From Pristiophorus japonicus (Eukaryota): 64,000 nucleotides of DNA. Within the stretch, counting starts at the first letter, position 1. Every line of letters begins with the position of its first letter. The notes under the pieces are model-generated. The model worked only from the letters and a program-made list of their open reading frames with translations, was not told the DNA's origin and searched no databases. The stretch is taken from the NCBI RefSeq assembly GCF_044704955.1, contig NC_091995.1, forward strand, positions 1,178,001 to 1,242,000. The letters run 5' to 3'. The position numbers and the translations under genes are program-made. Below are positions 30,761-64,000 of the stretch, piece by piece.

Positions 30761-30765
30761 TGCTA

Positions 30766-30789
30766 GGGACTTTACAGCAGAATTCCCCC
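30766..30789. promoter_or_regulatory. Two kappaB-like sites in the tapasin promoter region
   Basis: GGGACTTTAC (30766-30775) and minus-strand GGGGAATTCT are each one mismatch from GGGRNWYYCC. Confidence 0.35.
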
Positions 30790-42641: not shown

Positions 42642-42741
42642 TCACACCAACAAGTATGGCCTCCTGTACCTGCTGCTACACTTGGGTGTTCCCCGGGCCA
42701 GGTACCACACCTCGGTGTGTCGATTGAGGAATGTCAGCGGG
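42642..42741 (-). CDS. SOUL-like last coding exon (SPLTFLNRHTEVWYLARGTPKCSSRYRRPYLLV-stop)
   Basis: ttgttccctccgcag| acceptor, TGA stop, and the C-terminal NRH.EVW SOUL signature. Confidence 0.9.
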
Positions 42742-45700
42742 CTGCGGAGGGAACAACAGCAAAAGTGACAAATTACTCAGCACAAAACCCTCGCCATTTG
42801 CTCAACAGCTTCCTCAACAAACTGTGTTCATGCACCTCGGCCCCAAGCAGCGGAAGGGGCAAAGGGAGTAATGGGATTAAACAGTGTTCCCCATTCACCC
42901 ACCTCCATCCCCTGTCCCCCCGTTACCCCTCACCGGCCCCCCGTTACACCTCCCTCCGTCCCCGTTACCCCTGCCCGTCCCCGTTACCCCTCCCCCGTCC
43001 CCGTTACCCCTGCCCGTCCCCGTTACCCCTCCCCCGTCCCCGTTACCCCTCCCCGTCCCTGTCCCCCCGTTACACCTCCCCAGCCCCCCGTTACACCTCC
43101 CCATCCCCGTTACCCCTCCCCCTGTCCCCATTACCCCTGCCCGTCCCCGTTACCCCTCCCCCGTCCCTGTCCCCCCGCTACACCTCCCCAGCCCCCCGTT
43201 ACACCTCCCCGTCCCCATTACCCCTCCCCCTGTCCCCATTACCCCTGCCCGTCCCCGTTACCCCTCCCCCGTCCCTGTCCCCCCGCTACACCTCCCCAGC
43301 CCCCCGTTACACCTCCCCGTCCCCGTTACCCCTCCCCCTGTCCCCATTACCCCTGCCCGTCCCCGTTACCCCTCCCCCGTCCCTGTCCCACCGTTACCCC
43401 TCCCCCGCCCCCATTACCACTCCCCGTCCCTGTCCCACCATTACCCCTCCCCCGCCCCCGTTACCCCTCCCCCGTCCCTGTCCCACCGTTACCCCTCCAC
43501 GGCCCCCCGTTACCCCTCCCCATTACCCCTCCCCCTGGCCCCGTTACCCCTCCCCACCCCTGTCCCCCCGTTACCTCTCTCCCGCCCCTGTCCCACCGTT
43601 ACCCCACCCCCGCCCCCGATACCCCGCCCCGTCCCCGTTACCCTTCCCCCATCCCCGTTACCCCTCCCCGTCCCCGTTACAGATCCCCGTTACCACGCCC
43701 CGTCCCCGTTACCCTTCCCCCGTCCCCGTTACCCTTCCCCCGTCCCCGTTACCCCGTCCCCATTACCCCTCCCCTGTCCGCGTTACCCCTCCCCCATCCC
43801 CATTACCCCTCCCCGTCCCTGTCCCCCGGTTACCCCCTCCCTGTCTCCGTTACCCCTCCCTGTCCCTGTCCCCCCGTTACCCCTCCCTGTCCCCGTTTAA
43901 CTAATTTACTGGAATTCTTTGAGGATATAACGAGCATGGTGGATAGAGGTGTACCGATAGATGTGGTGTATTTAGATTTCCAAAAGGCATTCGATAAGGT
44001 GCCACACAAAAGGTTACTGCAGAAGATAAAGGTACGCGGAGTCAGAGGAAATGTATTAGCATGGATAGAGAATTGGCTGGCGAACAGAAAGCAGAGAGTC
44101 GTGATAAATGGGTCCTTTTCGGGTTGGAAATCAGTGGTTAGTGGTGTGCCACAGGGATCAGTGCTGGGATCACAACTGTTTACAATATACATAGATGACC
44201 TGGAAGAGGGGACAGAGTGCAGTGTAACAAAATTTGCAGATGACACAAAGCTTAGTGGGAAAGTGCGTTGTGTAGAGGACACAGAGAGGCTGCAAAGAGA
44301 TTTAGATAGGTTAAGCGAATGGGCTAAGGTTTGGCAGATGGAATACAATGTCGGAAAGTGTGAGGTCATCCACCTTGGGAAAAAAAACAGTAAAAGGGAA
44401 TATTATTTGAATGAGGAGAAATTACAACATGCTGCGGTGCAGAGGGACCTGGGGGTACTTGTGCATGAATCCCAAAAAGTTAGTTTGCAGGTGCAGCAGG
44501 TAATCAGGAAGGCGAATGGAATGTTGGCCTTCATTGCGAGAGGGATGGAGTACAAAAGCAGGGAGGTCCTGCTGCAACTGTACAGGGTATTGGTGAGGCC
44601 GCACCTGGAGTACTGCGTGCAGTTTTGGTCACCTTACTTATGGAAGGATATACTGGCTTTGGAGGGGGTACAGAGACGATTCACTAGGCTGATTCCGGAG
44701 ATGAAGAGGTTACCTTATGATGATAGATTGAGTAGACTGGGTCTTTACTCATTGGAGTTCAGAAGGATGAGGGGTGATCTTATAGAAACATTTAAAATAA
44801 TGAAAGGGATAGACAAGATAGAGGCGGAGAGGTTGTTTCCACTGGTCGGGGAGACTAGAACTAGGGGGCACAGCCTCAAAATACGGGGGAGCCAATTTAA
44901 AACCGAGTTGAGAAGGAATTTCTTCTCCCAGAGGGTTGTGAATCTGTGGAATTCTCTGCCCAAGGAAGCAGTTGAGGCTAGCTCATTGAATGTATTCAAA
45001 TCACAGATAGATAAATTTTTATCCAATAAGGTAATTAAGGGTTACGGGGAGCGGGCGGGTAAGTGGAGCTGAGTCCACGCCCAGATCAACCATGATCTTG
45101 TTGAATGGCGGAGCAGGCTCGAGGGGCTAGATGGCCTACTCCTGTTCCTAATTCTTATGTTCTTATGTTCTTACTCCCTCCCCTGTCCCTGTCCCCCGTT
45201 ACCCCTCCCTGTCCCCGTTACCCCCTCCCCCGTCCACCCTCCCCTGTTCCCCCATTACCCCCCCGCCCCCGTTAACCCCTCCCCCATCCCCGTTACCCCC
45301 TCCCCGTTCCCCATTACCCCCTCCCCGTTCCCCCATTACCCCCTCCCCATCCCCCATTACCCCCTCCCCAATCTCCCATTACCCCTCCCCATTCCCCCAT
45401 TACCCCTCCGCCTCGCCCCATTACCCCCTTCCCCATTACCCCTCCCCGCCCCCCCATTACCCCTTCCCCATTCCCCCATTACCCCTCCCCATTCCCCCAT
45501 TACCTCCTCCTCCTGCCCCCGTTCCCCCTCTCCCGTTCCACATTCCCCCATTTTTCCCTCCCTGTTCCCCCTCCCCCCGTTCCCTCGTCCCCCCGTTCCC
45601 CATTTCCCCCTCCCCGTTCTCCCGTTACCCCCTCCCCGTTCCCTGTTACCCTTCCCCCATTCCCCTCCTCGCCCCACCGTTACCCCTCCCCCATCCCTAT

Positions 45701-48700
45701 TACCCCTCCCCGCCCCGGTTACCCCCTCCCCCATTCCCCTCCCCGTTCCCACTTTACCCCTCCCTGTCCCCCGTTACCCCTCCCTCGTTCCCCCGTTACC
45801 CCCTCCCCCATTCCCCCATTACACCTCCCCGCCCCCGCCCCGTCCCCCCGCCCCGTCCCCCGTTACCCCCTCCCTGCCCCCTCCCCGTTACCTCCTCCCC
45901 CGCTCCCCCACTACCCCTTCCCCGTCCCCCCATTACCCCCTCCCCCGTTTCCCCACCCCATTCCCCCATTCACCCCTCCGCTGTTCCTCCTGCCTCCGTT
46001 CCCCCATCTCCCGTTCCCTGTTCCCCCATTTTCACCTCCCCGTTCCCCCTCCCCGTTCCCTCGCCCGCCCGTTCCCCCTCTCACATTCTCCATTCCCCAT
46101 TACCCCCTCCCCATTCGCCCATTACCCCATTACCCCATTCCCAATTCCCCTCCTCGCCCCCCCGTTTCCCCCTCCCCGCCCCCCTCCCCCTGTTCTCCCG
46201 TCCCCCCTCCCCCGGTTCCCCGTTCCCCCCTCCAGTTACCCCATCCCTGTTCTCCCCTCCCCCTTTCCCCCTCCCCTGTTCCCTCCCTCCTGTCACCCGT
46301 CCCCCCTCCCCATTCCCCCGTCCCCTCTCCCCCGTTTCCCTCCTCCCCATTCCCCATTCCCTCTCCCCTCCCCCATTCCCCCTCCCCCTCGCCGCCGTTA
46401 CTCCCTCCCCTGTTACCCCTCCCCAGGTTCCCCTTTCCCATCCCCATTCCCCCATAACCCCTTTCCCCCATTGCCCCCTCCCTGTTTCCCCTCCCCATTC
46501 CCCCCTCCCCTGTCCCCCTGTTCCCTCCTCCCCCGCTCCCTCCTCCCCGTTCCCTCCTCCCCTATCCCCCTGCTACCCCCTCCCCCGATCTCCCCGTCCC
46601 CCTGTTCCTCCCTCCCCATTTCCCATTCCCCCATCTCCTGTCCCCCAGTTCCCCCCGTTCCCTCCGCCCCTGCTTCCCCGCTCCCCCGTTCCCCCTGCCC
46701 CGCACCCCCTCCCTTGCACACCCGCTCCCCCTTCCCCGCTCCCCCCTTACCCCGTCCGCTCCCCCGTTCCCCCTTTCCCCCTCCCCGCTCCCCCGTTCCC
46801 CCTGCCCCGCACCCCCTCCCCTGCACACCTGCTCCCCCTTCCCCGCTCCCCCCTTACCCCGTCCACTCCCCGTTCCCCCTTTCCCCCCTCCCCCGCTCCC
46901 CCCTTGCCCCCCAACTCCCCCGGCATGATCCCTACCTGTTATAACGCGCCGTGTAGAAACGATCCCACTGGAACTGCTCCCCTTCCCGAAGCAGGCTTTC
47001 GTACAGCTTCTCTGAGATCCGCCGTTGATTGAAGAACCAGCCCTCGTACGATTTCACAAACATCGCCATTGGGGGGAATCGCTTCAGGAACACCTACAAT
47101 GGAAAGGAAAGGTTAGTATCACGCTGGGTGTGCCCCGGGGTTGCACCTGTCACTGGCCCCCTGACCCCCGCTCCCAGCACTGACAGACAAGTGACGTTGC
47201 CCTGGGTGATTGAAGACGCAATCGGCTGCTGAGCAGGACGAGTTTCCTGGCGTGTCGGGGAGCAGGGGGCGATGAGGCAGCGGGGAGGTGGAGGTAGGCT
47301 GAGAGAGGCCACAAATTTCAAAATTAACAGGGACCCCTGCATCCACCAACTCCCCCCCCCCCCCCACCCGTCGGAGTACGCTGTCGTTCACACCCCTACC
47401 CCAGGCCCCGCAAGGGGTCCCCGAGCCTCCACAAGCCCCAGGCCTCAGCCTCTCCCCACTGGCATCCACTGCCAAAGCCCTTGTCTGGTGCTGAGGTTAA
47501 GCCCAAGGTCCATTGCCTCGGGTCCAACATCCCACTCACGTCAGTCCTTCATATTTCTGCCTGGCCGGGAGAAGGTGCCTGGGAGTTCAAATGGCTCGGG
47601 CCTGATGCTGGGGAAAATCTGCAAAATGAAATAGACAGGCTAAATGAGGTGTCAAAGATTTGGCAGATGGGAGTATAATGTTGGAAAGTGTGAGGTTATG
47701 CACTTTGGCAGAAAAAAATCAAAGAACAAGTTATTATTTAGATGGAGAAAGATTGCAAAGTGCTGCAGTACAGCGGGACCTGGGGGTACTTGTGCATGAA
47801 ACACAAAAGGTTAGTATGCAGGTACAGCAAGTGATCAGGAAGGCCAATGGAATCTTGGCCTTTATTGCAAAGGGGATGGAGTATAAAAGCAGGGAAGTCT
47901 TGCTACAGTTATACAGGGTATTGGTGAGGCCACACCTGGAATACTGCGTGCAGTTTTGGTTTCCATATTTACAAATGTATATACTTGCTTTGGAGACAGT
48001 TCAGAGAAGGTTCACTCGGTTGATTCCAGGGATGAGGGAGTTGACTTATGAGGAAAGGTTGAGTAGGTTGGGCCTCTACTTATTGGAATTCAGAAGAAAG
48101 AGAGGTGATCTTATCGAAACGTATAAGATTATGAGGGGGCTTGACAAGGTGGATGCAGAGAGGATGTTTCCACTGATGGGGGAGACTAGAACTAGGGGGC
48201 ATGGTCTTAGAATAAGGGGCCGCCCATTTAAAACTGAGATGAGGAGGAATTTCTTCTCTCTGAGGGTTGTAAATCTGTGGAATTCGCTGCCTCAGAGAGC
48301 TGTGGAAGCCGGGACATTGAGTATATTTAAGACAGAAATAGACAGTTTCTTAACCGATAAGGGAATAAGGGGTTATGGGGAGCGGGCAGGGAAGTGGAGC
48401 TGAGCCCATGATCAGATCAGCCATGATCGTATTAAATGACGGAGCAGGCTCGAGGGGCTGTATGGCCTACTCCTGCTCCTATTTCTGATGTCCTTATGTG
48501 ATGTTTTGCTGCGGAGATCGGTCACAATGGGGACGGTGACTACACCCGAGGGGCAAAGACACGGCGATGACAGCAACTGAGGTGCGGAAGTTGGGGTGGG
48601 TGGGGGGGTGGCGGAGTCACCGCCACGGTGATGTCATCACGGCGCCGTGTCACCTCGGCTCTTCCCTTCACTTAAAAGGGCGCGCCCCTGCGATTTTTAA

Positions 48701-51700
48701 ACTTTGGCCCACTGGGCCCCGGGGGAGGGTTTCAGTTGGCAGCCCAGCTGAACCCGGGGGGGGGCATAATTGTCGGGCCAGAGACGGCAGGCGGCCGACA
48801 AAAAAAAAACATGGCGGCAGTGTCAGTGCGCCCGCCTCTTTAATGGAAGCTGCACTGTCGCTGGAGAAGGCCGCAGCCTCACTGGACCACCGGGGAAAAG
48901 CTTGTTTTAGCACCCCCGGGCGGGACGAAGATTTCCGAGGGGATTTTCGGGGTTAACAGGCCTTAAGGAAAGGGGCAATTTCGACCCTTCATCCATGCCC
49001 AGAGCAGCTGTTGGATACCAAATGTTTGCACAGTTTGGCAGGTCACGATGCACTAAAGAACAGCGTGGTCCTTGAACCTTCTTCCTACTTGGGATTGGAT
49101 GGCTCAATAACAGGATCATTATTAACCAAGAGGCTGGGATCCACAGGTTAACTAATATGGTCTCATTACAGTTTGGCGAATGTTTGGTGTGGAGGTGCGG
49201 CAAGAGATCGTGGCGGAGGTGCGGCGAGTGTTTTTGTAGTGGAGGAGCGGTAAGAGATCGTGGCAGAAGTGCGCCGAATGATGTTACAGGGCCCAGAAGA
49301 GCCGAGGGCCCAGGGGCAGCACAGGTCAGCCCACACTGTGCGATATGTGAGCGCACTGGGTCCATGCAGCAGAGCAGGTCTCCAGCCGTCCTGGTTAACC
49401 CTTGCCACTGGATAAAGGCCGAGCTCTGTCAAGCCCGTGTGGTGGCTGATGTGTGACGGTCACCACACGTTAAAACAATCCAGGCTCAGGCATCTTCCAC
49501 CCTTCAATTGGAATTCAGGACTGGAATATCGGGTCCATCGAAACACCTGTGAACTCGTGGAAGCAAGTCATCCTCGTTCGAGGGACCGCCTATGATGATG
49601 GTCGAGGGAAAGCGCGTGGTGTGTTGGGAGCTCCTTGTTAGAATCAAGGGGGTCCAGATAACATCTGACGGACAAAGTCCTCTCTCTGTTATTTTAGTGG
49701 AGGCATCAACCCAATTTGAAAATATAATAGCATGGATATAAGATTGGCTGACAAAACAGAAAACAGAGAATCGGGATAAATGCTTCATTCTCTGGTTGGC
49801 AATCAGTAACGAGTGGGGTGCCGCAGGGATCAGTGCTGGGACCCCAACTATTTACAATCTATATTAACAACTTGGAAGAGGCGACTGAGTGTAACGTAGC
49901 CAAGTTTGCTGACGATACAAAGATGGGAGGAAGGGTAATGTGTGAGGAGGAAATAAAGACTCTGCAGGAGGACATAGACAGGCTAAGTGAGTGGGCAAGA
50001 ATTTGGCAGATGGAGTATAATGTTGGAAAATGTGAGGTCATGCACTTTGGCAGAAGAAAATCAAAGAGCAAGGTATTATTTAAATGGAGAAAGATTGCAA
50101 AGTGCTGCAGTACAACAGGACCTGGGGGTCCTGGTGCATGAAACACAAAAGGATAGTATGCAGGTACAGCAAGTGGTCAGGAAGGCCAATGGTATCTTGG
50201 CCTTTATTGCAAAGGGGATGGAGTATAAAAGCAGGGCAGTCTTGTTACAGCTGTACAGGGTATTGGTGAGGCCACACCTGGAATACGGCGTGTAGTTTTG
50301 GTTTCCATATTTACGAAAGGATATACTTGCTGTGGGGGCAGTTGAGAGAAGGTTCACTCGGTTGATTCCGGAGATGAGGGATTGACTTATGAGGAAAGGT
50401 TGAGTAGGTTGGTCCTCTACTCATTGGAATTCATACGAATGAGAGGGGATCTTATTGAAACATATAAGATTATGAGGGGGCTTGACAAGGTGGATGCAGA
50501 GAGGATGTTTCCACTGATGGGGGAGACTAGAACTAGGGGGCATAATCTTAGAATAAGGGGCCTCCCATTTAAAATTGAGCTGAGGAGGAATTTCTTCTCA
50601 GAGGGTTGTAAATCTGTGGAATTCGCTGCCTCAGAGAGCTGTGGAAGCTGGGACATTGAATAAATTTAAGACAGAAATAGACAGTTTCTTGAACGGTAAG
50701 GGATAAGGGGTTATGGGGAGTGGGCAGGGAAGTGGAGCTAAGTCCATGATCAGATCAGCCATGATCGTATTAAATGGCGGAGCCGGCTCGGGGGGCCGTA
50801 TGGCCTACTCCTGCTCCTATTCCTTAAGTTCTTATGTTCAATTAAGGCAAAACGGGTTCATGGCGCCAGATCTCTTCCGAGCCTTGTACCCAACAACAAC
50901 TTGTATTTATATAGCGCCTTTAACATCGTGAAACATCCCAAGGCGCTTCACAGAAGGATTATGAGATAAAAAAATTGACACCAAGCCACATAACTATAAA
51001 TTAGCACAGGTGACCAAAAGCTTGGTCAAAGAGATAGGTTTCGAGGAGTGTCTTGAAGGAGGAAAGAGAGGGAGAGAGGCGGAGAGGTTGAGGGAGGGAT
51101 TTCCAGAGCTTGGGGCCCAGGCAGCTGAAGGCACGGCCACCGATGGTGGAGCGATTATAATCAGGGATGGTCAGGAGGGCAGAATTAGAGGAGCGCAGAC
51201 ATCTCGGGGGGGGTTGTGGGGCTGGAGGAGATTACAGAGATAGGGAGGGGCGAGGGCCATGGAGGGATTTGTAAACAAGGAGGAGAATTTTGAAATCGAG
51301 GCGCTGCTTAACCGGAAGCCAATGTAGGTCGGCGAGCACAGAGGAGCGGGACTTGGTGCAAGTTAGGACACGGGGAATCCGAGTTTTGGATCACCTCTAG
51401 TTTACGTAGGGTAGAATGTGGGAGGCCAGCCAGGAGTGCCTTGGAATAGACAAGCCTAGCGGTAACAAAGGCATGGATGAGGGCTTCAGCAGTGGATGAG
51501 CTGAGGCAGGGGCGGAGACGGGTGATGTTACAGAGGTGGAAATAGGCGGTCTTAGTTATGCTGCGGATATGTGGTCACAAGCTCATTTCAGGGTCAAATG
51601 TGACACCAAGTTTGCGAACAGTCTGGTTCTTCACCCCAGGTGAAACTGAACCTCTGCCTGATGATCCGATGACCCCAAGGGTGCCCCCCCCACCCTCCCC

Positions 51701-54700
51701 GATGACCCCAAAGGTGCCCCCCACACCGGCCCTCCCCCCCGTCCCGACCCCATCGGAATACCCAGGAGTGGTGAGCTCCTGCGTAGGATGGGTGCACAAG
51801 CCAATTTCAGGGCAACTCTGGGTATGTACGCACTTCGGGAAGTTAGAGCGGGGTGGGTGGGACAGGCCCCTCGAAATGGCACACTTGGCAAATGGCTGGT
51901 TACCGCAATCTGGAAAATTGATCAATGAGGGAGGAAAGGCCCGATCTTCATCAGTTCACCTGGGGAATGCTGGATATCAGGGACCTGATTGGCAGTGCCA
52001 CGCTAAGGGGCCTGAAGGCAGGAAACATCTTGTATGAGGGAATTCCTGCATCTGCATCTCGGTGGCTAAACAACATAACATAAGAACATAAGAAAAAGGA
52101 GCAGGAATAGGCCATAGGGCCCCTCGAGCCTGCTCCGCCATTTAATACGATCATGGCTGATCCGATCATGGACCCAGCTCCACTTCCCTGCCCGCTCCCC
52201 ATTACCCCTTAATCCCTTAACGGTTAAGAAATGTCTATTTCTGTCTTAAATTTATTCAATGTCCCGGCTTCCACAGCTCTCTGAGGCAGAGAATTCCATA
52301 GATTTACAACCCTCTGAAAGAAGAAATTTTTCCCCTTCTCAGTTTTAAATGGGCAGCCCCTTATTCTAAGATTATGCCCCCTAGTTCTAGTCTTCCTCAT
52401 CAGTGGAAACATCCTCTCTGCATCCACCTTGTCAAGCCCCTCATAATCTTATACGTTTCGATAAGATCACCTCTCATTCTTCTAAATTCCAATGAGTAGA
52501 GGCCCGACTTACGCAACCTTTGCTCATAGGTTAACCTCCTCATCTCCAGAATCAACCTTGTGAACCTTCTCTGAATTGCCTCCAAAGCAAGTACATCCTT
52601 TCGTAAATATGGAAACCAAAACTGCACGCAGTATTCCAGGTGTGGTCTCACCAATATCATGTACAACTGTAGCAAGACTTCCCTGCTTTTATACTCCATC
52701 CCCTTTGCAATAAAGGCCAAGATTCCATTGGCCTTCCTGATCACTTGCTGTACCTGCATACTAACCTTTTGTGTTTCATGCACAAGTACCCCCAGGTCCC
52801 TCTGTGCTGCGGCACTTTGCAATCTTTCTCTATTTAAATAATACCTTGCTTTTTGATTTTTTTCTGCCAAATTGCATGACCTCACACTTTCCAACATTAT
52901 ACTCCATCTGCCAAATTCTTGCCCACTCACTTAGCCTGTCTATGTCCTTTTGCAGATTATTTGTGTCCTCCTCACACATTGCTTTTCCTCCCATCTTTGT
53001 ATCGTCAGCAAACTTGGCTACGTTACACTCGGTCCCTTCTTCCAAGTCGTTAATATAGATTGTAAATAGTTGGGGTCCCAGCACTGATCCCTGCGGCACC
53101 CCACTCGTTACTGGTTGCCAACCAGGGAATGAACCATTTTTCCCGACTTTCTCTTTTATGTTAGTTAGCCAATCCTCTATCCATGCTATTATATTAATCC
53201 CAACCTTGTGAACTTTAATCTTGTGCGGTAACCTTTTATGTGGCACCTTGTCAAATGCCTTCTGGAAGTCCAAATACACCACATCCACAAAGGGTCGGAG
53301 ACCAAGCATAATCAGGACCCATCGACATATCCGCCCCACCCCTGTTTTTCTCTACCAAGCCCCAATCCAGTTACAACGCCTAAAAAGCCGAAGGGAATTC
53401 ATGGCCAATGTCTCCGAATCATAGAAGTTGACAGCACGGAAGGAGGCCATTTCGGCCCATCGTGTCCGCGCCGGCCGACCAAGAGCTACCCAGCCTAATC
53501 CCACTTTCCCGCTCTCGGTCCGTAGCCCTGTAGGTTACAGCACTTCAAGTGCACATCCAGGTACTTTTTAAATGTGGTGAGGGTTTCTGCCTCTACCACC
53601 CTTTCAGGCAGTGAGTTCCAGACCCCCACCACCCTCTGGGTGAAGAAATTTCCCCTCAAATCCCCTGTAAACCTCCCCCCAATTTAATTCTACACCCCCT
53701 GGTTATTGACCCCTTTTCTAAGGGAATAGGCCCTTCCTATCCACTCTATCCAGGCCCCTCATAATTTTATACACTGCAATAAGGCCTCGCCCTGAACTAA
53801 CGGAGAGAGGGCTGTGAAGAGAACACGTCAAACGGTTGTCAGCTAATATCACTAGTAGGGAGCTCGAGCCCCACGTACCCTGGTACATAAGAAAATAAGA
53901 AATAGGAGCAGGAGTCAGCCATTTGGCCCCTCGAGCCTGCTCCGCCATTCAATAAGATCATGGCTGATCTGCTCCTGGCCTCAACTCCACTTCCCTGCCC
54001 ACTCCCCATAACCCTTGACTCACTTATCTTTCAAAAATCTGTCTATCCGCACCTTAAATATATTCAATGACCCAGCCTCCACAGCTCTCTGGGGCAGTGA
54101 ATTCCACAGATTTACAACCCTCTGAGAGAAGAAATTCTTCCTCATTTCCGTTTTAAATGGGCGACCCCTTATTCTGAAACTATGCCCCCTAGTTCTAGAT
54201 TCCCCCACGAGGGGAAACATCCTCTCTGCATCCACCTTGTCAAGCCCCCTCAGAATCTTGTACTTTTCAATAAGATCACCTCCTAGTCTTCTAAACGCCA
54301 ATGAATATAGGCCCAACTTGTTCAACCTTTCTTCATATGACAACCCCCTCATCTCAAGAATCAACCTCGTCAACCTTCTCTGAACAGCCTCCAATGCAAG
54401 TATATCCTTCCTTAAATACGGAGACCAAAACTGCACGCAGTACTCCAGGTGCGGCCTCACCAATACCCTGTACAGTTGTAGCAGGACTTCCCTGCTTTTA
54501 TACGCCATCCTCTTGCAATAAAGGCCAACATTCCATTTGGCTTCCTAATTACTTGCTGTACTTGCCGGTATTACCAGTTCACATGTTGACAGGGTGTGAG
54601 AGTACCCGGTGGCAAGAATATCTCAGTTTTGCCAGCAAGGCTCCTAGTCTCCACAGATACGATGGATGCTGGAGTCTGTCACTGGAAGAGGTGCAAAAAG

Positions 54701-57700
54701 CCACACTCACGGCTGTGTCCCTGGGAGCTGGGGGATTGGTGAAATATCTTCTGGGAACCATAGAATATACAGCTGTCTCTCGGGGCAAGCCATTGATATT
54801 CCTGAAGGTGGTGAGGATAGGTGCAGTCCGCTCTAACTGAATACCTGGGGAAACACGAAGACAAGTCATCAGCTCTAGGTTAACCTGTACAGCCCAGAAT
54901 CACACTCAGACAGCATGTTAACCAGGTCACTACTGACACCAGGGCAGCCTAGAAACACATTCAGCCAGCACTTCACAACAAGAAAGTAATTAAATTAAGC
55001 TGCTTGCTCCTTGATTGTAAACAGAATGTTATCACTATGGTAACCATCTTGGTTTAACTCATTGGACTTGGTTGTGTTTCACTTTATTTTGGCTCAGTGT
55101 ACCTTAGCTTGATATTGTTTGGTTTGGCTCGACATGGCTTTGTTTGGTTTAAATTAGTTTGGTTTGCTTTGGTTTGGTTAGTGTGGGTTGGTTTGGTTTG
55201 GCTTAAGAACATAAGAACATAAGAAATAGGAGCAGGAGTAGGCCATACGGCCCCTCGAGCCTGCTCCGCCATTTAATACGATCATGGCTGATCCGATCAT
55301 GGACTCAGCTCCACTTCCCCGCCCGCTCCCCATAACCCTTTACTACCTTATCACTCAAAAATCTGTCTATCTCTCTCTTAAATTTATTCAATGACCCAGC
55401 CTCCACAGCTCTCTGAGGCAGCGAATTCCACAGATTTACAACCCTCAGAGAAGAAATTCCTCCTCATCTCAGTTTTAAATGGGCGGCCCCTTATTCTAAG
55501 ACTATGCCCCCTAGTTCTAGTCTCCCCCATTAGTGGAAGCATCCTCTCTGCATCCACCTTGTCAAGCCCTCTCATAATCTTATACATTTCGATAAGATCA
55601 CCTCTCATTCTTCTGAATTCCAATGAGTAGAGGCCCAACCTGCTCAACCTTTCCTCATAAGTCAACCCCCTCATCTCCGGAATCAACCTTGGCTTGGCTT
55701 GAATTAGTTTAGTTTGGTTTGGCTGGTTTTGAATTAGTTTGGTTTGGCTTGGCTTGATAGTTTGGTTTGGTTTGATTTGATTTGGCTTGAATTAGTTTGG
55801 CTTGGCTTGGGTTTAATTAGTTCGGCTTGGGTTGATTGGATTTGGCCTGAATTAGTTTGGCTTGGCTTGGGTTTAATTAGTTCGGCTTGGGTTGATTGGA
55901 TTTGGCCTGAATTAGTTTGGCTTGGCTTGGTCCTCTTTGCTTTGGTTTGTTTGAGCTGGATGTGTTTTCCTTAGCTTGCTGTTTTTTCTTGGGTTGTATG
56001 TAAATCAAGCCTCCCAGGGCTCTTGTTCATTTAGCTCACGATTTTCCGCCATTGCCTACCTGGTTCATTTTTCTTATGAAAGTATTCCTTTAGGCGGGCG
56101 ATAGCTTGATAACTCTGCTCATTGGAAGCAATAAAAGTCCCAATCCACATACTGGGTTCGTAGATACGTGTCTGTTGGGAAAAACACAATGTCAGCACTG
56201 GTGCACTTGCTCAGGCTGCACTTTGCTCAGTCTAAATATCAATGGCTCACATCTTACTGGCCCACCAATGTGGCACTTTTATGAAAGACTTTCATTTACT
56301 ACTTATACAATTTTTTTAACACTCACCAAATGCTAGATGGATCTTTATGTCATTTTTACAAAGAATCAGCCTGTATTTCTACACCGCCTTTCATAACCTT
56401 GAATAAGTAATCAGGAAGGCAAATGGAATGTTGGCCTTTATTGCAAAGGGGGATGGATAAAAGCAGAGAAGTCCTGCGACAACTGTATAGGGTATGGGTG
56501 AGGCCACACCTAGAGTACTGCGTGCAGTTTTGGTCTCCTTATTTAAGGAAGGATATACTTGCATTGGAGGCAGTTCAGAGAAGGTTCACGAGGTTGATTC
56601 CTGAGATGAAGGGGTTGTCTTACGAAGAAAGGTTCAGCAGATTGGGCTTATACTCATTGGAGTTTAGAAGAATGAGAGGTGATCTTATTGAAACGTATAA
56701 GATTCTGAGAGGGCTCGACAGGGTAGATACAGAGAGGATATTTCCCCTCATGGGGGAATCTAGAACTAGGGGGAATAGTTTCAGAATAAGGGGCTACCCA
56801 TTTAAAATGGAGATGAGGAGGAATTTCTTCTCTCAGAGGGTCGTGAACCTTTGGAACTCTCTACCCCAGAGAGCTGTGGAGGCTGGGTCATTGAATATAT
56901 TTAAGGTGGAGATCGACAGATCTTTGAACGATAAGGGAGTCAAGGGTGATGGGGAGCGGTCAGGGAAATTGAGGCAAGGTCAGATCAGCCATGATCTTAT
57001 TGAATGGCGGAGCAGGCTCGAGGGGCTCCTATTTCTGATGTTCATCCACTAATATCCAGCATTGTAAAGTCAGCGGCAAAAGCTCAAAGGTCAGGTACAG
57101 ATGGAACACGGAGCTGACTGACTCTCGGCGCTTTGTGATGGTTGGTCCTTATTTTTCTTTCTTGTTATTTTTAATTTGCCATTGCATCTCCAAAAACATC
57201 TTGGCCCTGAAATTGTGGTCGGAGGCTTCCCGTGGGTGGATGCCTCCAACCACAGAAATATTTACGGAAGTATCTGATGGTCCCAGAGGAATGAACACTT
57301 GCGGTCTGAGTCCTCCAGGTGCAGCCCAGCGTAAGAGCCCACATATTCCAGGAGCATCTGTGCAGCCTGGGATCACATGGGCCAGGATCAACCAATGAAA
57401 ATGGCCTGTCCCCATTCACAGTAATTGTGAGTTTCGTTTGTACGGAGATCCATTCAATTTCATGACCACTGGAATCTTGGCCTGTATTGCAAAGAGGATG
57501 GAGTATAAAAGCAGGGAAGTCTTGCTACAGTTATACAGGGTATTGGTGAGGCCACACCTGGAATACTGCGTGCAGTTTTGGTTTCCATATTTACGAAAGG
57601 ATATACTTGCTTTGGAGGCAGTTCAGAGAAGGTTCACTCGGTTGATTCCGGGGATGAGGGGGTTGACTTATGAGGAAAGGTTGAGTAGGTTGGGCCTCTA

Positions 57701-60700
57701 CTCATTGGAATTCAGCAGAATGAGAGGTGATCTTATCGAAACGTATAAGATTATGAGGGGCTTGACAAGGTGGATGCAGAGAGGATGTTTCCACTGATGG
57801 GGGAGACTAGAACTAGGGGGCGTAATCTTAGAATAAGGGGCCGCCCATTTAAAACTGAGATGAGGAGGAATTTCTTTTCTCAGAGGGTTGTAAATCTGTG
57901 GAATTCGCTGCCTCAGAGAGCTGTGGAAGCTGGGACATTGAATAAGTCTCTGAATAAGACAGAGATAGACAGATTCTTAACCGTTAAGGGAATAAGGGGT
58001 TATGGGGAGCGGGCAGGGAAGTGGAGCTGAGTCCATGATCAGATCAGCCATGATCGTATTAAATGGCGGAGCAGGCTCGAGGGGCCGTATGGCCGACTTG
58101 TGCACCTACTTCTTATGTTCTTATGTTCTAAGAATGTGGATACTCCCAAAACACACATAAACATTTTAAATAAGTAACATACACACCATATATTTAAAAT
58201 TAATTGAGGTTGAATTTAATTAAATGCTTTAGACAAAAATGTATTTTTTCGAGAAAAAAAATTAAATGTTTTAATAAACTCACCTTAATGAACAGGGTTT
58301 TTAATATAAAAATTAATGATAACACTTTATTTTTCTATTTTTTTAAAACTCTTACACTGATACAGCTTTTAGCAGGTGTAAGAGTTTGAAGGACATTCGC
58401 TGGGCAAGACTTGAGCATATAGCCGAAATCTCCACTTGCAAAAGCTCGTCTCCCGGGGATGCATGTTCGCAAGTGCCGTATTTAGGTGATTTGCCGTAGA
58501 GAGAGTGCAACGAAGGTTCACCAGACTGATTCCTGGGATGGGGGGGATTGTCCTATGAGGAGAGATTGAGCAGACTGGGCCGAGTTTAGAAGAATGCGAA
58601 ATGATCTCATTGAAACAGACACAATTCTTACACGGGCTTGACAGGTTAGATGCAGGATAGATATTTCCTCTGACTGGGGAGTCTAGAACCAGGGGTCACA
58701 GTCTCAGAATAAGGGGTCGTCCATTTAAGACTGAGATGAGGAGAAACTTCTTCACTCAGAGGGTGGTGAATCTCTGGAATTCTCTACCCCAGAGAGTTGT
58801 GGAGGGTCAGTCGTTGACTATATTCGAGACAGAGATCAATAGATTTTTGGATATTAAGGGAATCAAAGGATAGCTATCAAACTGGAACAATACAGAGGAG
58901 GATTTCCTGGAGTGCATAGGGGATGGTTTTCTGGACCAATATGTCGAGGAACCAACTAGAGAGCTGGCCATCCCAGACTGGGTGTTGTGTAAAGAGAGAG
59001 GATTAATTAGCAATCTTGTTATGCGAGGCCCTTTAGGAAAGAGTGACCATAATATGGTAAAATTCTTCATTAAGATGGAGAGTGACACAGTTAATTCAGA
59101 GACTAAGATCCTGAACTTAAAGAAAGGTAACTTCGATGGTATGAGACGTGAATTGGCTAGGATAGACTGGCGAATGATACTTAAAGGATTGACGGTGGAT
59201 AGGCAATAGCAGACATTTAAAAATCACATGGATGAACTTCAACAATTGTACATCACTGTCTGGCATAAAAATAAAACGGGGAAGGTGGCTCAACCGTGGC
59301 TAACAAGGGAAATTAGGGATAGCGTTAAATCCAAGGAAGAGGCATATAAATTGGCCAGAAAAAGCAGCAAACCTGAGGACTGGGAGAAATTTAGAATTCA
59401 GCAGAGGAGGACAAAGGGTTTAATTAGGAGGGGGAAAACAGAATATGAGAGTAAGCTTGCAGGGCACATAAAAACTGACTGCAAAAGCTTCTATAGATAT
59501 GTGAAGAGAAAAAGATTAGTGAAGACAAATGTAGGTCCCTTACAGTCAGAATCAGGTGAATTTATAATGGAGAACAAAAAAATGGCACACCAATTGAACA
59601 AATACTTTGGTTCTGTCTTCACTAAGGAAGACACAAATAACCTTCCGGAAATACTAGGGGTCCGAGGGTCTAGCGAGAAGGAGGAACTGAAGGAAATCCT
59701 TATTAGTCAGGAAATTGTGTTAGGGAAATTGATAGGATTGAAGGCCGATAAATCTCCAGGGCCTGATAGTCTGCATCCCAGAGTACGTAAGTAAGTGGCG
59801 CTAGAAATAGTGGATACATTGGTGATCATTTTCCAACATTCTATAGACTCTGGATCAGTTCCTATGGATTGGAGGGTAGCTAATGTAACCCCACTTTTTG
59901 GGAGGGAGAGAGAAAACGGAATTATAGACCGGTTAGCCTGACATCGGTAGTGGGGAAAATGTTGGAATCAATTATTAAGGATGAAATAGCAGCGCATTTG
60001 GAAAGCAGTGACAGGATTGGTCCAAGTCAGCATGGATTTATGAAAGGGAAATCATGCTTGACAAATCTTCTAGAATTTTTTGAGGATGTAACTAGTAGAG
60101 TGGACAAGGGAGAACCAGTGGATGTGGTGTATTTGGACTTTCAAAAAGCTTTTGACAAGAGATTAGTGTGCAAAATCAAAGCACATGGTATTGGGGGTAA
60201 TGTACTGACGTAGATAGAGATCTGGTTGGCAGACAGGAGCAAAGAGTAGGAATAAACTTATCCTTTTCAGAATGGCAGGCAGTGACTAGTGGGGCACCGC
60301 AAGGTTCAGTGCTGGGACCCCAGCTATTTACAATATACATTAATGATTTAGACGAAGGAATTGAATGTAATATCTCCAAGTTTGCAGATGACACTAAGCT
60401 GGGTGGCAGTGTGAGTTGTGACGAGGATGCTAAGAGGCTGCAGGGTGACTTGGACAGGTTAGGTGAGTGGGCAAATGCATGGCAGATACAGTATAATGTG
60501 GATAAATGTGAGGTTATCCATTTTGGTGGCAAAAACAGGAAGGCAGAATATTAACTGAATGATGACAGATTAGGAAAAGGGAGGTGCAACGAGATCTGGG
60601 TGTCATGGTACATCAGTCATTGAAAGTTGGCATGCAGGTACAGCAGGTGGTGAAGAAGGCAAATGGCATGTTGGCCTTCATAGCGAGAGGATTTGAGTAT

Positions 60701-62664
60701 AGGAGCAGGGAGGTCATACTGCAGTTGCACAGGGCTTTGGTGAGGCCACACCTTGAATATTGTGTTCAGTTTTGGTCTCCTAATCTGAGGAAGGACATTC
60801 TTGCTATTGAGGGAGTGCAGCGAAGGTTCACCAGACTGATTCCCGGGATGGCAGCACTGACATATGAAGAAAGACTGGATAGACTGGGCTTATATTCACT
60901 GAAATTTAGAAGGATGAGAGGGGATCTCGTAGAAACATATAAAATTATGACAGGATTGGACAGATTAGATGCAGGAAGAATGTTCCCGATGTTGGGGAAG
61001 TCCAGAACCAGGGGTCACAGTCCAAGGATAAGGGGTAAGCCATTTAGGACCGAGATGAGGAGAAACTTCTTCACTCAGAGAGTTGTGAACCTGTGGAATT
61101 CTCTACCGCAGAGAGTTGTTGAGGCCAATTCGTTGGACATATTCAAAAGGGAGCTAGATGTGACCCTTACGGCTAAAGGGACCAAGTGGTATGGAGAGAA
61201 AGCAGGAATGGGGTACTGAGGGAATGATCAGGCATGATCATATTGAATGGTGGAGCAGGCTCGAGGGGCCGAATGGCCGACTCCTGCTGCTAATTCTTAT
61301 GCTGTTATGTTCTTAACATACAGGCTGCTTGAGCAGAAAAGGCCATTTGTTCATTTTCCCTCTTTTCTTATTGACACCAATTTTAATGGCAGAGTCTTGG
61401 CTCATGCTGCACAGCCCTCCAACCCTACCCCAAAAATCTTAATCATGGAAATTAGAGCTAGGCCCATTCAGAGTGAAATCAGGAAGCACTTTTTCCACAC
61501 AAAGTATCGTGGAAATCTCGACCTCTCTTCCCGTTCCCCCTCCCCCAAAAGGCTGTGGATCCATTAGAATTTTCAAGACTGAGATCAATGGATTTTTGTT
61601 TTGTTGTTTTGGTGTCAAGAGATATGCAGAAAATGCGGGTCGAGGAAGTTTAAGTACGGATTAGTTATGGTTTAGTAGAATGTCAGAATAGGTTCGAGGA
61701 GCTGAATGGCCTCCTCCTATTCCTATGTAAGAAATAGGAATGTTGTACTGAGGGCCAGTGTAAAACGACCTTATCTTTGCTACCACTGGACAGAGCAAGA
61801 ATCGCAGATCTCAGTTCTCCACATTCGATCATTTAAACAACAACAACAACTTATATTTATATAGAGCCTTCAACATAGTGAAACGTCCCAAGGCGCTTCA
61901 CAGGAGTATTATGAGATAACAAAAATTCACACCGAGCCACATAAGGAGAAATTAGCGCAGGTGACCAAAAGCTTGGTCAAAGAGGTATGTTTTATGGAGC
62001 GTCTTGGAGGAGGAAAGAGATGTAGAGAGGCGGAGAGGTTTAAGGAGAGAGTTCCAGAGCTAGGGGCCCAGGCAGCTGAAGGCACGGCCACCGATTGTGG
62101 AGCGATTATAATCAGGGATGGTCAGGAGGGCAGAGTTATAGGAGTGCAGATACCTCGCGGCGGGGGGAGGGTTGTGGGGCTGGAGGAGATTACAGAGATA
62201 GGGAGGGGTGAGGGCCATGGAGGAATTTGAAGACAAGGATGAGAATTTTGAAATCGAGGCGATGCTTAACCGGAAGCCAATGTAGGTCAGCGAGCACAGG
62301 GGGTGATGGGTGAACGGGACTCGGTGCGAGTTAGGACACGGGGCAGCCGAGTTTTGGATCACCTCTAGTTTACGCAAGGGTAGAATGTGAGAGGCCAGCC
62401 AGGAGTGCGTTGGAACAGTCAAGTCTGGAGGGAGCAAAGGCACGGATGGGAAAGGATGGATAAAGTAACATATTGATGCGTGTAGATAGGAAAGTGAGGT
62501 GGGAGCTAATTTCAGAACGCATTGATGTCCACTGATGTCTGAGTGTGGTTAGTTTGATTAGCACGCGGTGCCTATGCAAGATTACCTCATAATCTGAACT
62601 CCTGCACATGGACACGAAGGAGTAACACTGCTGAACCTCGCTGCAATAGTACGGCCTTCGTTGT
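42642..62664 (-). CDS. SOUL/HEBP-family heme-binding-like protein, 5' partial (5 exons in window, 193 aa)
   Basis: Exons 62586-62664, 56060-56171, 54711-54844, 46936-47093 and 42642-42741 join in phase (2/0/1/0/2). The protein carries SOUL motifs YETRIYEPSVW, RL..Y....NEPG, TAPI, NPPAPRD.AV, FVKSYEGW and YNSP...NRHTEVW. Confidence 0.9.
42900..43895. repeat. C-rich minisatellite (CCCCGTTACCCCT-based)
   Basis: Visible tandem array; the source of the spurious Pro-rich ORFs. Confidence 0.95.
43896..45172 (+). mobile_element. Young 5'-truncated CR1 with an uninterrupted ORF2 C-terminus (~390 codons)
   Basis: Open from LTNLLEFFE to RAGKWS-stop (45072), with FADD intact; (ttcttatg)n tail. Confidence 0.92.
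45173..46922. repeat. C-rich low-complexity/minisatellite tract abutting the SOUL exon D donor
   Basis: About 1.75 kb of CCCC(G/A)TT(A/C)C repeats. Confidence 0.95.
46936..47093 (-). CDS. SOUL-like exon D (VFLKRFPPMAMFVKSYEGW...FYTARYN)
   Basis: Perfect branch point TACTAAC (47118-47112), polypyrimidine tract and tag| acceptor; CAG|gtaggg donor; 158 nt. Confidence 0.9.
54711..54844 (-). CDS. SOUL-like exon C (GIQLERTAPIL...FTNPPAPRDTA)
   Basis: gtgtttccccag| acceptor and GCC|gtgagt donor, 134 nt. Lies within ORF 54579..54869(-). Confidence 0.9.
55065..55950. repeat. (GGTTT/GGCTT)n pentamer repeat interrupted by a CR1; includes a 60-bp exact duplication
   Basis: Visible pentamer repeats; lines 55801 and 55861 are identical. 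Confidence 0.85.
56060..56171 (-). CDS. SOUL-like exon B (TRIYEPSVWIGT...ARLKEYFHKKNEP)
   Basis: gtttttcccaacag| acceptor and CAG|gtaggc donor, 112 nt. Confidence 0.88.
58490..61315 (+). mobile_element. Long degenerate CR1 (end of endonuclease SDHN motif through RT) preceded by a CR1 3' fragment
   Basis: ORFs 58982-59209 (PLGKSDHNMV), 59228-59794 and 59950-61219. Confidence 0.9.
62586..62664 (-). CDS. SOUL-like exon A (QRRPYYCSEVQQCYSFVSMCRSSDYE)
   Basis: gattttgcag| acceptor and GAG|gtaatc donor, 79 nt. Cys-x5-Cys-x6-Cys N-terminal motif like that of secreted-type fish SOUL proteins. Confidence 0.85.
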
Positions 62665-62857
62665 CTGCAAAATCCAACGGTGGCATTTAATCCTTACAGG
62701 TCATTGCACCATGAGTCAGTCAACCACATTGAAACCCATTCCTAATAAGAACATAAGAAATAGCAGCAGGAGTAGGCCATACGGCCCCTCGAGCCTGCTC
62801 CACCATTTAATACGATCATGGCTGATCTGATGATGGACTCAGCTCCACTTCCCTGCC

Positions 62858-63530
62858 TGTTGGGGAGCGTTTCCAGAGCAAAGGCACCTGTGGCAAAATG
62901 TTAGAATTAAATATGTGTGGCAGGACATGTATGAAGATGGCTACCAGTAATTCAGCGAAGCACTAAGGGAATGCAGCAAGCAGAAATGGACCACATTCCT
63001 AGTTACTGATAATTGCCGTTTCTCACACGGGAATACACAGAAAAGATCAGCTCAGCAGATGTCTCTAATCAACAGGCTTCCAGGCCCCAGACAAGATGTC
63101 CCGGTAGAATAATAGAACAATAGTACTCCTGTAACAGGATTAAGATAAGGAAACTACTCAAAGACAGCACCCAAGGACAGTAAGATAAGCGGGGGACCTG
63201 GACAATGTCAGAAGACCATGAGTAACCCTTAGTACCACATGAGGCGATCACATAGCCACCTAATGTTTAGAGACCAATTCTATTGGTCTAATTGAATCTA
63301 TATGTAATCTATAATCAATATGATTGGATAGTGTCCAGCCGAAATGGGCTGATGTAACTGTAGTAAACTGTTGTAAAACATATAAAAATCCATGAAATCC
63401 TTAGTTCAGCGGAGAGAGGTGCCTGGATGAACCAGTGGCTTCATCTCCCCGCCGGCGTGATAAACCGTTTTGATGTATGGAACTGACCCAGAGTGACGAG
63501 TGATTCTTGGAGGGAACATTCGTGCTAACA
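62858..63530 (+). mobile_element. Solo LTR (673 bp) inserted in a CR1 3' end
   Basis: TGTT...AACA inverted termini, 5-bp TSD CTGCC (62853-62857 and 63531-63535), CCAAT/ATTGG boxes and TATAAAA near 63381. Confidence 0.85.
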
Positions 63531-64000
63531 CTGCCCACTCCCCATAACCCCTTAATCCCTTATTGGTTAAGAAACTGTCTATCTCTTTGTCTTAAATTTA
63601 TTCAATGTCCCAGCTTCCACAACTCTCTGAGGCAGCGAATTCCACAGATTTACAACCCTCTGAGAGAAGAAATTCCTCCTCATCTCAGTTTTAAATGGGC
63701 GGCCCCTTATTCTAAGATTATGCCCCCTAGTTCTAGTCTCCCCCATCAGTGGAAACATCCTCTCTGCACCCACCTTGTCAAGTTCCCTCATAATCTTATA
63801 TGTTTCGATAAGATCCCCTCTTTCATCTGAATTTCAATGAGTAGAGGCCCAACCTCCTCAACCTTTCCTCATAAGTCAACCCCCTCATCCCCGGAATCAA
63901 CCGAGTGAACCTTCTCTGAACTGCCTCCAAAGCAAGTTTATCCTTTCGTAAATATGGATGGTTTCCCTAGGGAAATAGTGGAAGCAGTTAATATGGATTC

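What the first reader, a model, noticed from the sequence alone, without database searches (positions are those of the whole stretch)
42642..62664. Hidden, divergent SOUL/HEBP heme-binding-family gene directly upstream of tapasin on the same strand
Seen: five small exons (79, 112, 134, 158, 100 nt) buried in about 20 kb of CR1 splice in phase to a 193-aa open frame. Only two of them are touched by the ORF track. Knowledge: YE.R.Y....W, TAP, NPP.P.D, YNSP and NRH.EVW are SOUL-domain signatures. In mammals TAPBP's neighbours are ZBTB22/DAXX and RGL2, not a SOUL gene. Human HEBP1 lies on 12p13, the arm that carries the tapasin paralogue TAPBPL, and yields the FPR3-agonist peptide F2L. Inference: this may be an ancestral MHC-linked SOUL gene, a heme- or ligand-binding factor embedded in the shark class I antigen-processing region and lost from the mammalian MHC.
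Basis: partly seen in the sequence, partly recalled or inferred. Interest (0 to 1): 0.8.

Follow-up and report, generated by a model that had tools for sequence, protein, structure and literature searches.

The report
Secreted-type SOUL gene beside shark tapasin
The five small exons are real and belong to an already annotated Japanese sawshark gene ("heme-binding protein 2-like"), whose shark-and-ray relatives all carry a secretion signal and four conserved cysteines and which also sits just upstream of tapasin in a sawfish, a linkage that the papers I searched do not discuss.

Summary
Observation confirmed. Five minus-strand exons (62664-62586, 56171-56060, 54844-54711, 47093-46936, 42741-42642) have canonical AG/GT sites and fit in phase. 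Their translations are 100% identical to residues 21-213 of the database protein P0011, Pristiophorus japonicus "heme-binding protein 2-like" (213 aa). P0011 hits Pfam SOUL at 104 bits, E 1.2e-29.

So the gene is annotated, not hidden. Coding exon 1, a 20-residue signal peptide, lies beyond the window end.

Eleven elasmobranch orthologues exist. Ten of them share the signal peptide, and all have four cysteines in the mature protein, the one exception being an apparently mis-modelled C-terminus. This suggests a secretory-pathway SOUL protein, unlike cytosolic HEBP1/HEBP2. The heme-ligand histidine of mouse SOUL is replaced.

Tapasin exons lie about 18 kb downstream on the same strand. In the sawfish, a published supplementary table lists "heme-binding protein 2-like" directly upstream of tapasin on the same strand. 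The white shark orthologue appears to be on the TAPBP chromosome.

The linkage is therefore probably elasmobranch-wide. Ancestry in all jawed vertebrates and any heme or antigen-processing role remain untested.

The parts
62586..62664 (-). Encodes residues 21-46 (QRRPYYCSEVQQCYSFVSMCRSSDYE) with three conserved cysteines. AG acceptor at 62666-62665, donor gtaatc.
   Evidence: tblastn of P0011 is 100% identical inside the exon; orthologue hits E about 1e-8.
56060..56171 (-). Coding exon 3, 112 nt (TRIYEPSMWIG...KKNEP).
   Evidence: Pfam SOUL E 0.011, profile positions 19-56. Splice sites. tblastn. Contig depth in run X10 ends exactly at its 5' edge.
54711..54844 (-). Coding exon 4, 134 nt (GIQLERTAPILT...NPPAPRDTA).
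   Evidence: tblastn E 1e-11 to 1e-19 against orthologues and 100% to P0011. Alone it has no Pfam or PDB hit.
46936..47093 (-). Coding exon 5, 158 nt (VFLKRFPPMAMFVKSYEGW...YTARYN).
   Evidence: Pfam SOUL E 0.0027, profile positions 104-158. PDB HEBP2 E 0.05. The big search returned P0001 at 63% identity, E 3.7e-12. Splice sites.
42642..42741 (-). Last coding exon, 100 nt (S)PLTFLNRHTEVWYLARGTPKCSSRYRRPYLLV plus TGA. Holds the fourth conserved cysteine.
   Evidence: tblastn.
42918..46911 (.). C-rich minisatellite arrays (about 20-bp unit, G-rich on the gene's sense strand) that fill most of the last intron, interrupted by a CR1 copy at about 43900-45070.
   Evidence: ORF list.
34770..38662 (-). 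LTR-retrotransposon-like ORFs (gag/protease-like, RT-like and integrase-like by eye) in the spacer between the SOUL gene and tapasin.
   Evidence: ORF translations. Read by eye, not scanned against a family library.
18675..24384 (-). Tapasin-family gene. The N-domain is carried in ORFs 24384-23944 and 23079-22633, the IgV exon in 21229-20720 and the IgC1 exon in 19085-18675. These are ORF bounds, not exact exon bounds.
   Evidence: PDB: IgV matches TAPBPR and tapasin at E 1e-14. IgC matches TAPBPR at 2e-14. The N-domain exon matches tapasin only, E 4e-4. Pfam V-set and C1-set.

Best explanation
The region holds coding exons 2-6 of the Pristiophorus japonicus gene that public databases call 'heme-binding protein 2-like' (213 aa). 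It belongs to a single-copy clade of SOUL-domain (PF04832) proteins found in sharks and rays. Shown: the exon structure, identity to the database protein, SOUL-domain membership, descent that follows the shark/ray split, and a position directly upstream of tapasin on the same strand here and in the sawfish. Inferred: the precursor has a cleavable N-terminal signal peptide (conserved ..QGVxA|Q..). The mature protein of about 195 residues has four conserved cysteines, three just before and at the start of the SOUL domain and one near the C-terminus, which probably form two disulfides. It would therefore work in the secretory pathway or outside the cell, not in the cytosol like HEBP1/HEBP2. Most likely it uses the SOUL (GyrI-like) pocket to bind a small hydrophobic or planar ligand such as a tetrapyrrole, but not through the His42 ligand of mouse SOUL, which is Ala or Ile here. 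The adjacency to tapasin is an old, conserved micro-synteny of the elasmobranch MHC. A functional link to antigen processing is not shown.
For: Exons, phases and splice sites. Per-exon Pfam SOUL hits are collinear, and exon 5 hits HEBP2 in PDB. P0011 is 100% identical to all five exons and scores 104 bits on Pfam SOUL, E 1.2e-29. Eleven elasmobranch orthologues were found. Alignments A1 and A2 show the signal peptide in 10 of 11 sequences, invariant C27, C33 and C40, and a C-terminal Cys in 10 of 11. One search counts four or five cysteines per whole sequence; by the alignment the fifth lies in the signal peptide of three rays and in the odd N-terminus of Stegostoma, and one of the four in the Heptranchias isoform lies in its aberrant C-terminus. 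The tree splits sharks from batoids at 100/99. The A1 profile scores 80.8 bits on HEBP2 and 49.7 bits on HEBP1 in PDB, and the His of human YEIRHY aligns with Ala. His42 is described as the mouse SOUL heme ligand in PMC6321638. The ESM Atlas model has pTM 0.79 with SOUL-only neighbours. In the sawfish, LOC127585936 'heme-binding protein 2-like' (+, 910800-920236) comes directly before LOC127585928 'tapasin-like' (+, 922097-934977). The white shark orthologue P0010 sits on a contig of 115,848,844 bp, which fits the TAPBP chromosome, where an unnamed gene lies directly upstream of TAPBP on the same strand. Transcription: the depth bins of run X10 fit one contig of depth 5.5 that covers 56171-56057 and 54841-54789. 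That is an exon-exon junction with the expected 3-nt GTA ambiguity, and the unique intron sequence has no depth (the arithmetic is my inference).
Against: No signal-peptide predictor was available, so secretion rests on sequence features and the cysteine pattern. My AlphaFold model was poor (pLDDT 43.8), so disulfide geometry and the pocket could not be checked. Ligand binding is inferred from family membership only, and the one known heme ligand residue is absent. The exon-exon joint was not among the joints printed, and X10's library kind and organism are not on record. The sawshark branch is long (0.5 against a median of 0.27), although only 6 of 45 otherwise invariant positions differ, mostly conservatively. 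Synteny was seen in annotation for one other species only.
Confidence: 0.85

Rival explanations
1. One reading: an ancestral jawed-vertebrate MHC-linked SOUL gene, paired with tapasin before the bony-fish split and perhaps before the 2R duplications (mirrored by HEBP1 and TAPBPL on human 12p13), and later lost from the mammalian MHC.
For: The linkage is old within elasmobranchs: it is present in the sawshark window and in the sawfish table, and the gene tree follows the species split.
Against: All 11 relatives found are elasmobranch. No chimaera or bony-fish member was seen, although the word search cannot reach distant kin. By profile score the clade is nearer HEBP2 (80.8 bits) than HEBP1 (49.7 bits), which does not favour a simple HEBP1 ohnologue. 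No paper in the library links HEBP/SOUL with tapasin or TAPBPL.
Confidence: 0.2
2. An ER-luminal partner of tapasin or the peptide-loading machinery, kept next to tapasin because the two are co-regulated or co-adapted.
For: Head-to-tail arrangement on the same strand, only 1.9 kb apart in the compact sawfish genome. The signal peptide puts it in the same compartment as tapasin's luminal domains.
Against: No KDEL-type or other retention signal is visible at the variable C-termini. There is no expression or interaction data. Conserved adjacency alone is common for unrelated genes.
Confidence: 0.08
3. An ordinary cytosolic HEBP2 orthologue. The hydrophobic N-terminus would then be an annotation artefact.
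For: NCBI names it HEBP2-like, and HEBP2 is the best PDB match.
Against: The same N-terminal exon (MLPVLL..LHLL.QGV.AQ) is modelled independently in 10 of 11 species, with an invariant Ala at -1. Four cysteines absent from the aligned human HEBP2 stretch are conserved. Identity to HEBP2 is low: the word searches seeded with these proteins returned no canonical HEBP1/2.
Confidence: 0.04
4. A decaying or non-functional copy in the sawshark, with the open frame kept by chance and a long branch.
For: Long terminal branch. Introns swollen by CR1 and satellite DNA. FGGW has become YEGW.
Against: All five exons are open, with canonical splice sites, and all four cysteines and 39 of 45 clade-invariant positions are kept. 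A contig in run X10 fits a spliced transcript.
Confidence: 0.03

Closest known systems
HEBP2 / SOUL (human and mouse heme-binding protein 2; PDB 3R8J, 4AYZ, 5GQQ)
   Same: Same Pfam domain (PF04832) over its whole length. It is the best solved-structure match of the clade profile (80.8 bits, E 7e-22). Shared motifs are YE.R.Y....W, TAP(V/I), PP.P.D, YNSP and RxNE(V/I)W.
   Different: HEBP2 is described as cytosolic or mitochondria-associated and has no signal peptide (literature; PMC6321638, PMC3174058). This clade has a signal peptide, four conserved cysteines and Ala/Ile in place of the His42 heme ligand. It sits in the MHC next to tapasin, whereas human HEBP2 is on 6q24 (my knowledge).
HEBP1 / p22HBP (PDB 2GOV, 2HVA, 4A1M, 7OON)
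   Same: Same SOUL fold and domain. A cytosolic tetrapyrrole binder that uses no axial His ligand (knowledge), so it shows that the fold can bind porphyrins through the pocket alone.
   Different: A weaker match (49.7 bits). It has no signal peptide or cysteine pattern.
Automatically annotated 'heme-binding protein 2-like' genes of elasmobranchs, for example Pristis pectinata LOC127585936
   Same: These are the orthologues: 44-62% identity to the sawshark protein, with the same signal peptide and cysteines. LOC127585936 has the same position directly upstream of tapasin.
   Different: Nothing of substance. They are computer-named, and I found no paper in the library that discusses them.

Membership tests
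SOUL / HEBP family (Pfam PF04832) | Match to the SOUL profile above the curated cut-off (27 bits) over the full domain | tested here: met
   Exon by exon: exon 3 scores 16.2 bits (profile 19-56) and exon 5 scores 18.2 bits (profile 104-158), collinear but each under the cut-off. The database protein P0011, identical to the exons, scores 104 bits, E 1.2e-29, profile 3-172 of 173.
SOUL / HEBP family (Pfam PF04832) | SOUL (GyrI-like, two beta-alpha-beta-beta repeats) fold | tested here: inconclusive
   The ESM Atlas model of this exact protein (pTM 0.79) has only SOUL clusters as nearest structures, TM 0.73-0.87. My own AlphaFold2 model was too poor to search (pLDDT 43.8), although the order of its secondary-structure elements fits.
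SOUL / HEBP family (Pfam PF04832) | Binds heme or another tetrapyrrole | not testable with these tools
   This needs recombinant protein and hemin or protoporphyrin titration.
HEBP2 (SOUL proper) orthologue | Heme-ligand histidine (mouse SOUL His42, in YEIRHY) | tested here: not met
   In the profile alignment to human HEBP2 the His aligns with Ala in the clade consensus and Ile in the sawshark (YETRIY). The role of the residue is from PMC6321638.
HEBP2 (SOUL proper) orthologue | Cytosolic protein without a signal peptide | tested here: not met
   Ten of 11 clade members begin MLP(V/L)L..LHLL.QGV.A|Q, and four cysteines are conserved. This rests on sequence features; no predictor was run.
HEBP2 (SOUL proper) orthologue | Groups with HEBP2 to the exclusion of HEBP1 and other soul paralogues in a phylogeny | not tested
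Only a score difference is available, 80.8 against 49.7 bits.
Tapasin (TAPBP), identity of the downstream neighbour | Tapasin-type N-terminal domain followed by IgV and IgC1 domains | tested here: met
   The N-domain exon matches tapasin only (E 4e-4, PHCE..R..P motif). IgV matches tapasin and TAPBPR equally. The IgC1 exon's best hits are TAPBPR. Pfam finds V-set and C1-set. TAPBP versus TAPBPL is therefore likely but not proven by sequence; the sawfish counterpart is labelled TAPBP in the MHC.

The most novel reading that the evidence does not exclude
Elasmobranchs keep a secreted or ER-luminal SOUL-domain protein, disulfide-stabilised and lacking the classical heme-ligand His, locked head-to-tail to tapasin since before sharks and rays split. 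It could be a still unknown luminal component or regulator of MHC class I loading, or an MHC-encoded innate ligand- or heme-scavenging factor. It could also be a relic of a pre-2R tapasin-SOUL gene pair whose other copy survives as TAPBPL and HEBP1 on human 12p13.
Probability: 0.1. Interest if true: 0.8.

Novelty: new member of a known kind. Interest (0 to 1): 0.4.

Why it matters
The gene itself is ordinary in kind: a SOUL-domain protein, already machine-annotated. Two points are not in the literature I could search. First, an elasmobranch-wide SOUL clade appears to be targeted to the secretory pathway. Second, it has stayed the immediate upstream neighbour of tapasin in a shark and a ray, lineages that split early in elasmobranch history. 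For comparative immunogenetics it adds one more elasmobranch-specific resident of the MHC. It also gives a cheap, testable question: is it co-expressed with tapasin, is it secreted, and what does it bind? For MHC paralogy studies it offers a possible extra marker, SOUL genes next to tapasin-family genes, if a phylogeny supports it.

Tried and rejected
1. Exon 4 alone against PDB gave only chance antibody Fc matches. Exons 2, 4 and 6 alone gave no Pfam hit.

2. Reads: no run is on record as RNA, and nearly all laid contigs were CR1 copies. Only X10 touched the exons.

3. I looked for the signal-peptide exon between 62665 and 64000, using ATG plus an open frame plus a phase-2 GT donor, and tblastn with orthologues. 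There was no credible candidate.

5. AlphaFold2 with the 11-sequence alignment gave pLDDT 43.8. I ran no fold search on it.

6. The word search with a single protein and with the profile found only elasmobranch proteins. Human HEBP2 scores 80 bits against the profile, so canonical HEBPs were simply not among the word-sharing candidates. This blank says nothing about absence, and a third search was not worth its cost.

7. Literature searches for HEBP/SOUL with shark, MHC, tapasin, TAPBPL or signal peptide found nothing relevant.

Whole-protein analyses used the natural database proteins returned by the tools. N runs (6423-6561, 19329-19470) were left alone.
Full report
**What is there**

A motif scan of all six frames put the SOUL-like motifs on the minus strand.
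- 62664-62586 (79 nt)
- 56171-56060 (112 nt)
- 54844-54711 (134 nt)
- 47093-46936 (158 nt)
- 42741-42642 (100 nt, ending in TGA)

Every acceptor is a pyrimidine tract plus AG. Every donor starts with GT (gtaatc, gtaggc, gtgagt, gtaggg). The codon phases fit across all four junctions.

**Exon-by-exon family tests**

I never joined the exons in a search, a fold or a script.
- Against Pfam, the 112-nt exon hits SOUL (PF04832) at E 0.011, profile positions 19-56.
- The 158-nt exon hits SOUL at E 0.0027, positions 104-158. The two hits are collinear, and each is under the 27-bit cut-off alone.
- The 158-nt exon's only PDB matches are five HEBP2 chains, E about 0.05-0.09.
- The 134-nt exon alone gives only chance matches.

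**The gene is already on record**

The big search with the 158-nt exon returned one true relative. This was P0001, Heptranchias perlo "heme-binding protein 2-like", 63% identical, E 3.7e-12.

Word searches seeded with P0001, and then with an alignment, returned eleven proteins. All are from sharks and rays, all carry PF04832, and all are named HEBP2-like or, once, HEBP1-like.

One of them, P0011, is from Pristiophorus japonicus (213 aa, UniParc UPI00398E460F). P0011 as a whole scores 104 bits on Pfam SOUL, E 1.2e-29, profile 3-172 of 173.

So the window is Japanese sawshark, in agreement with earlier scan notes. The gene is real and it is not hidden.

Residues 1-20 of P0011 (MLPLFVVMLHLLSQGVLAQL) have no match in the window. 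No ATG-to-donor candidate in 62665-64000 looks like them. The 79-nt exon starts at an AG acceptor with one base of a split codon. It is therefore coding exon 2, and coding exon 1 lies beyond position 64000.

In the alignment of the eleven orthologues, ten start with M-L-P-(V/L)-L-..-L-H-L-L-.-Q-G-V-.-A-Q. This is a short hydrophobic core followed by small residues at -3 and -1 (Ala invariant), which is the pattern of a cleavable signal peptide. The Stegostoma model has a different N-terminus and is probably mis-annotated.

Three cysteines just behind the signal peptide (C27, C33, C40) are invariant, and a fourth near the C-terminus (..P(R/K)C..) is present in 10 of 11. One search counts four or five cysteines per whole sequence. 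By the alignment, the fifth lies in the signal peptide of three rays and in the odd N-terminus of Stegostoma. In the Heptranchias isoform, one of the four lies in its apparently mis-modelled C-terminus rather than at the conserved site.

Cytosolic HEBP1 and HEBP2 have neither feature. I infer a secretory-pathway protein with two disulfides. This is an inference from sequence, since no signal-peptide predictor was at hand.

**Relation to HEBP1 and HEBP2**

A profile of the clade scores 80.8 bits (E 7e-22) on human HEBP2 and 49.7 bits (E 2e-12) on HEBP1 in the PDB, over positions 44-199. In that alignment the His of human YEIRHY aligns with Ala in the clade consensus and Ile in the sawshark. By literature numbering this is His42, the heme ligand of mouse SOUL (PMC6321638). 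Heme binding by that route is therefore excluded, although pocket binding as in HEBP1 remains possible.

The ESM Atlas holds this exact protein with a model of pTM 0.79, and its nearest clusters are all SOUL. My own AlphaFold2 run on the 11-sequence alignment was poor (pLDDT 43.8), so I did not search with it.

A proper phylogeny with HEBP1, HEBP2 and the soul paralogues could not be made, because no such sequences could be fetched.

**Descent and constraint**

A maximum-likelihood tree of the eleven proteins separates sharks from batoids at 100/99 support and groups the galeomorph sharks. This is what single-copy orthologues inherited from the elasmobranch ancestor should show.

The sawshark branch is long (0.5). 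However, the protein differs at only 6 of 45 positions that are invariant in the others, mostly conservatively. Two other species show the same count. All frames and splice sites are intact.

**Transcription**

No listed run is on record as RNA, and almost everything laid was CR1. In run X10 the only depth on unique sequence falls in these bins:

| Bin | Depth |
|---|---|
| 56008-56074 | 1.48 |
| 56075-56141 | 5.5 |
| 56142-56208 | 2.46 |
| 54802-54868 | 3.28 |
| 54735-54801 | 1.07 |

For one contig of depth 5.5 these figures equal 18, 67, 30, 40 and 13 covered positions. That places the contig at 56171-56057 and 54841-54789.

The contig therefore starts exactly at the acceptor of the 112-nt exon. 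It overshoots that exon's donor by three bases (intron gta), and it starts three bases inside the next exon, which also begins GTA. This is the footprint of a single spliced sequence with an ambiguous 3-nt junction, and the unique intron parts have no depth. This is my inference from the bins.

**The neighbour**

On the same strand, ORFs at 24384-23944, 23079-22633, 21229-20720 and 19085-18675 carry a tapasin-type N-domain, an IgV exon and an IgC1 exon.
- The N-domain exon matches only tapasin in the PDB (E 4e-4).
- The IgV exon matches tapasin and TAPBPR equally.
- The IgC1 exon's best matches are TAPBPR.

Between the SOUL stop codon (42642) and the first recognisable tapasin exon I see only CR1 copies, satellites and an LTR-retrotransposon-like block at 34770-38662. 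"Directly upstream of tapasin on the same strand" therefore holds, with about 18 kb between them.

**Is the linkage real elsewhere?**

Supplementary file 1 of Verissimo et al. 2023 (PMC10751288) reproduces the NCBI gene list of sawfish chromosome 34. LOC127585936 "heme-binding protein 2-like" (+, 910800-920236) is followed directly by LOC127585928 "tapasin-like", which the authors mark TAPBP (+, 922097-934977). On one side lie vps52, gpank1 and a SLAMF9-like gene. On the other lie nelfe, SKIV2L and C2/BF. The main text never mentions heme or SOUL.

In the white shark list, an unnamed gene (LOC121291738) lies directly upstream of TAPBP on the same strand. The white shark orthologue P0010 lies on a contig of 115,848,844 bp, which fits that chromosome. 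This is suggestive but not proven.

No paper in the library connects HEBP/SOUL with tapasin, TAPBPL or the shark MHC.

**Verdict**

The family assignment is right. The linkage is real and at least elasmobranch-wide in its main lines.

The gene is not hidden. Its first exon is outside the window. It is most likely a secreted or luminal SOUL protein rather than a cytosolic heme-binding protein.

The claims that it is ancestral to all jawed vertebrates, that it binds heme, and that it acts in antigen processing are all untested. Only elasmobranch relatives were found, with searches that cannot exclude distant ones.

Noticed in passing
window 42918-43894 and 45213-46911: The last intron of the SOUL gene is mostly a C-rich minisatellite (unit about 20 bp, CCCCGTTACCCCTCCCCCGT; higher-order units of 108 and 216 bp), split by a CR1 copy. 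On the gene's sense strand it is G-rich with runs of four or five G. It gives long spurious proline-rich ORFs on the + strand.
   Followed up: partly
window 34770-38662 (-): Three long ORFs (336, 315 and 398 aa) that look like the gag/protease, reverse transcriptase and integrase of an LTR retrotransposon lie between the SOUL gene and tapasin. They are largely open, so the insertion may be young.
   Followed up: no
window 29600-34000 and 13580-13970: Arrays of a repeat that reads ..SAALPQYCPSD.. / ..STAPPTVR(R/H)SL.. in several frames on both strands. This is a minisatellite giving many overlapping ORFs of 80-230 aa, and it is not a gene as far as I can tell.
   Followed up: no
window 12700-16500: A tandem repeat whose + strand reads GVGLEEVTEIGRGVG.. 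/ GGGYRDREGC.. over several kb, downstream of the tapasin exons.
   Followed up: no
window 18675-19085 (-) against 22633-23079 (-): The tapasin-family gene is mixed in its nearest solved relatives. The IgC1 exon's best PDB hits are TAPBPR, with no tapasin among the top 60, whereas the N-domain exon matches tapasin only. A proper TAPBP/TAPBPL phylogeny for this gene would be worthwhile.
   Followed up: partly
P0001 (Heptranchias perlo isoform X3) and P0006 (Stegostoma tigrinum): P0001 diverges from all orthologues right after ..YTARYN, at the position of the last intron, so it looks like a read-through or alternative last exon that loses the NE(V/I)W motif and the fourth cysteine. P0006 has a 40-residue different N-terminus without a signal peptide. 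Both look like annotation artefacts or minor isoforms.
   Followed up: no
alignment A2, columns for residues about 129-150: The four batoid orthologues have lost the FPPM..FVK.FGGW stretch that sharks keep (for example SPAQ..FVR.AS..). This is a lineage difference inside the SOUL domain that might change the pocket.
   Followed up: no
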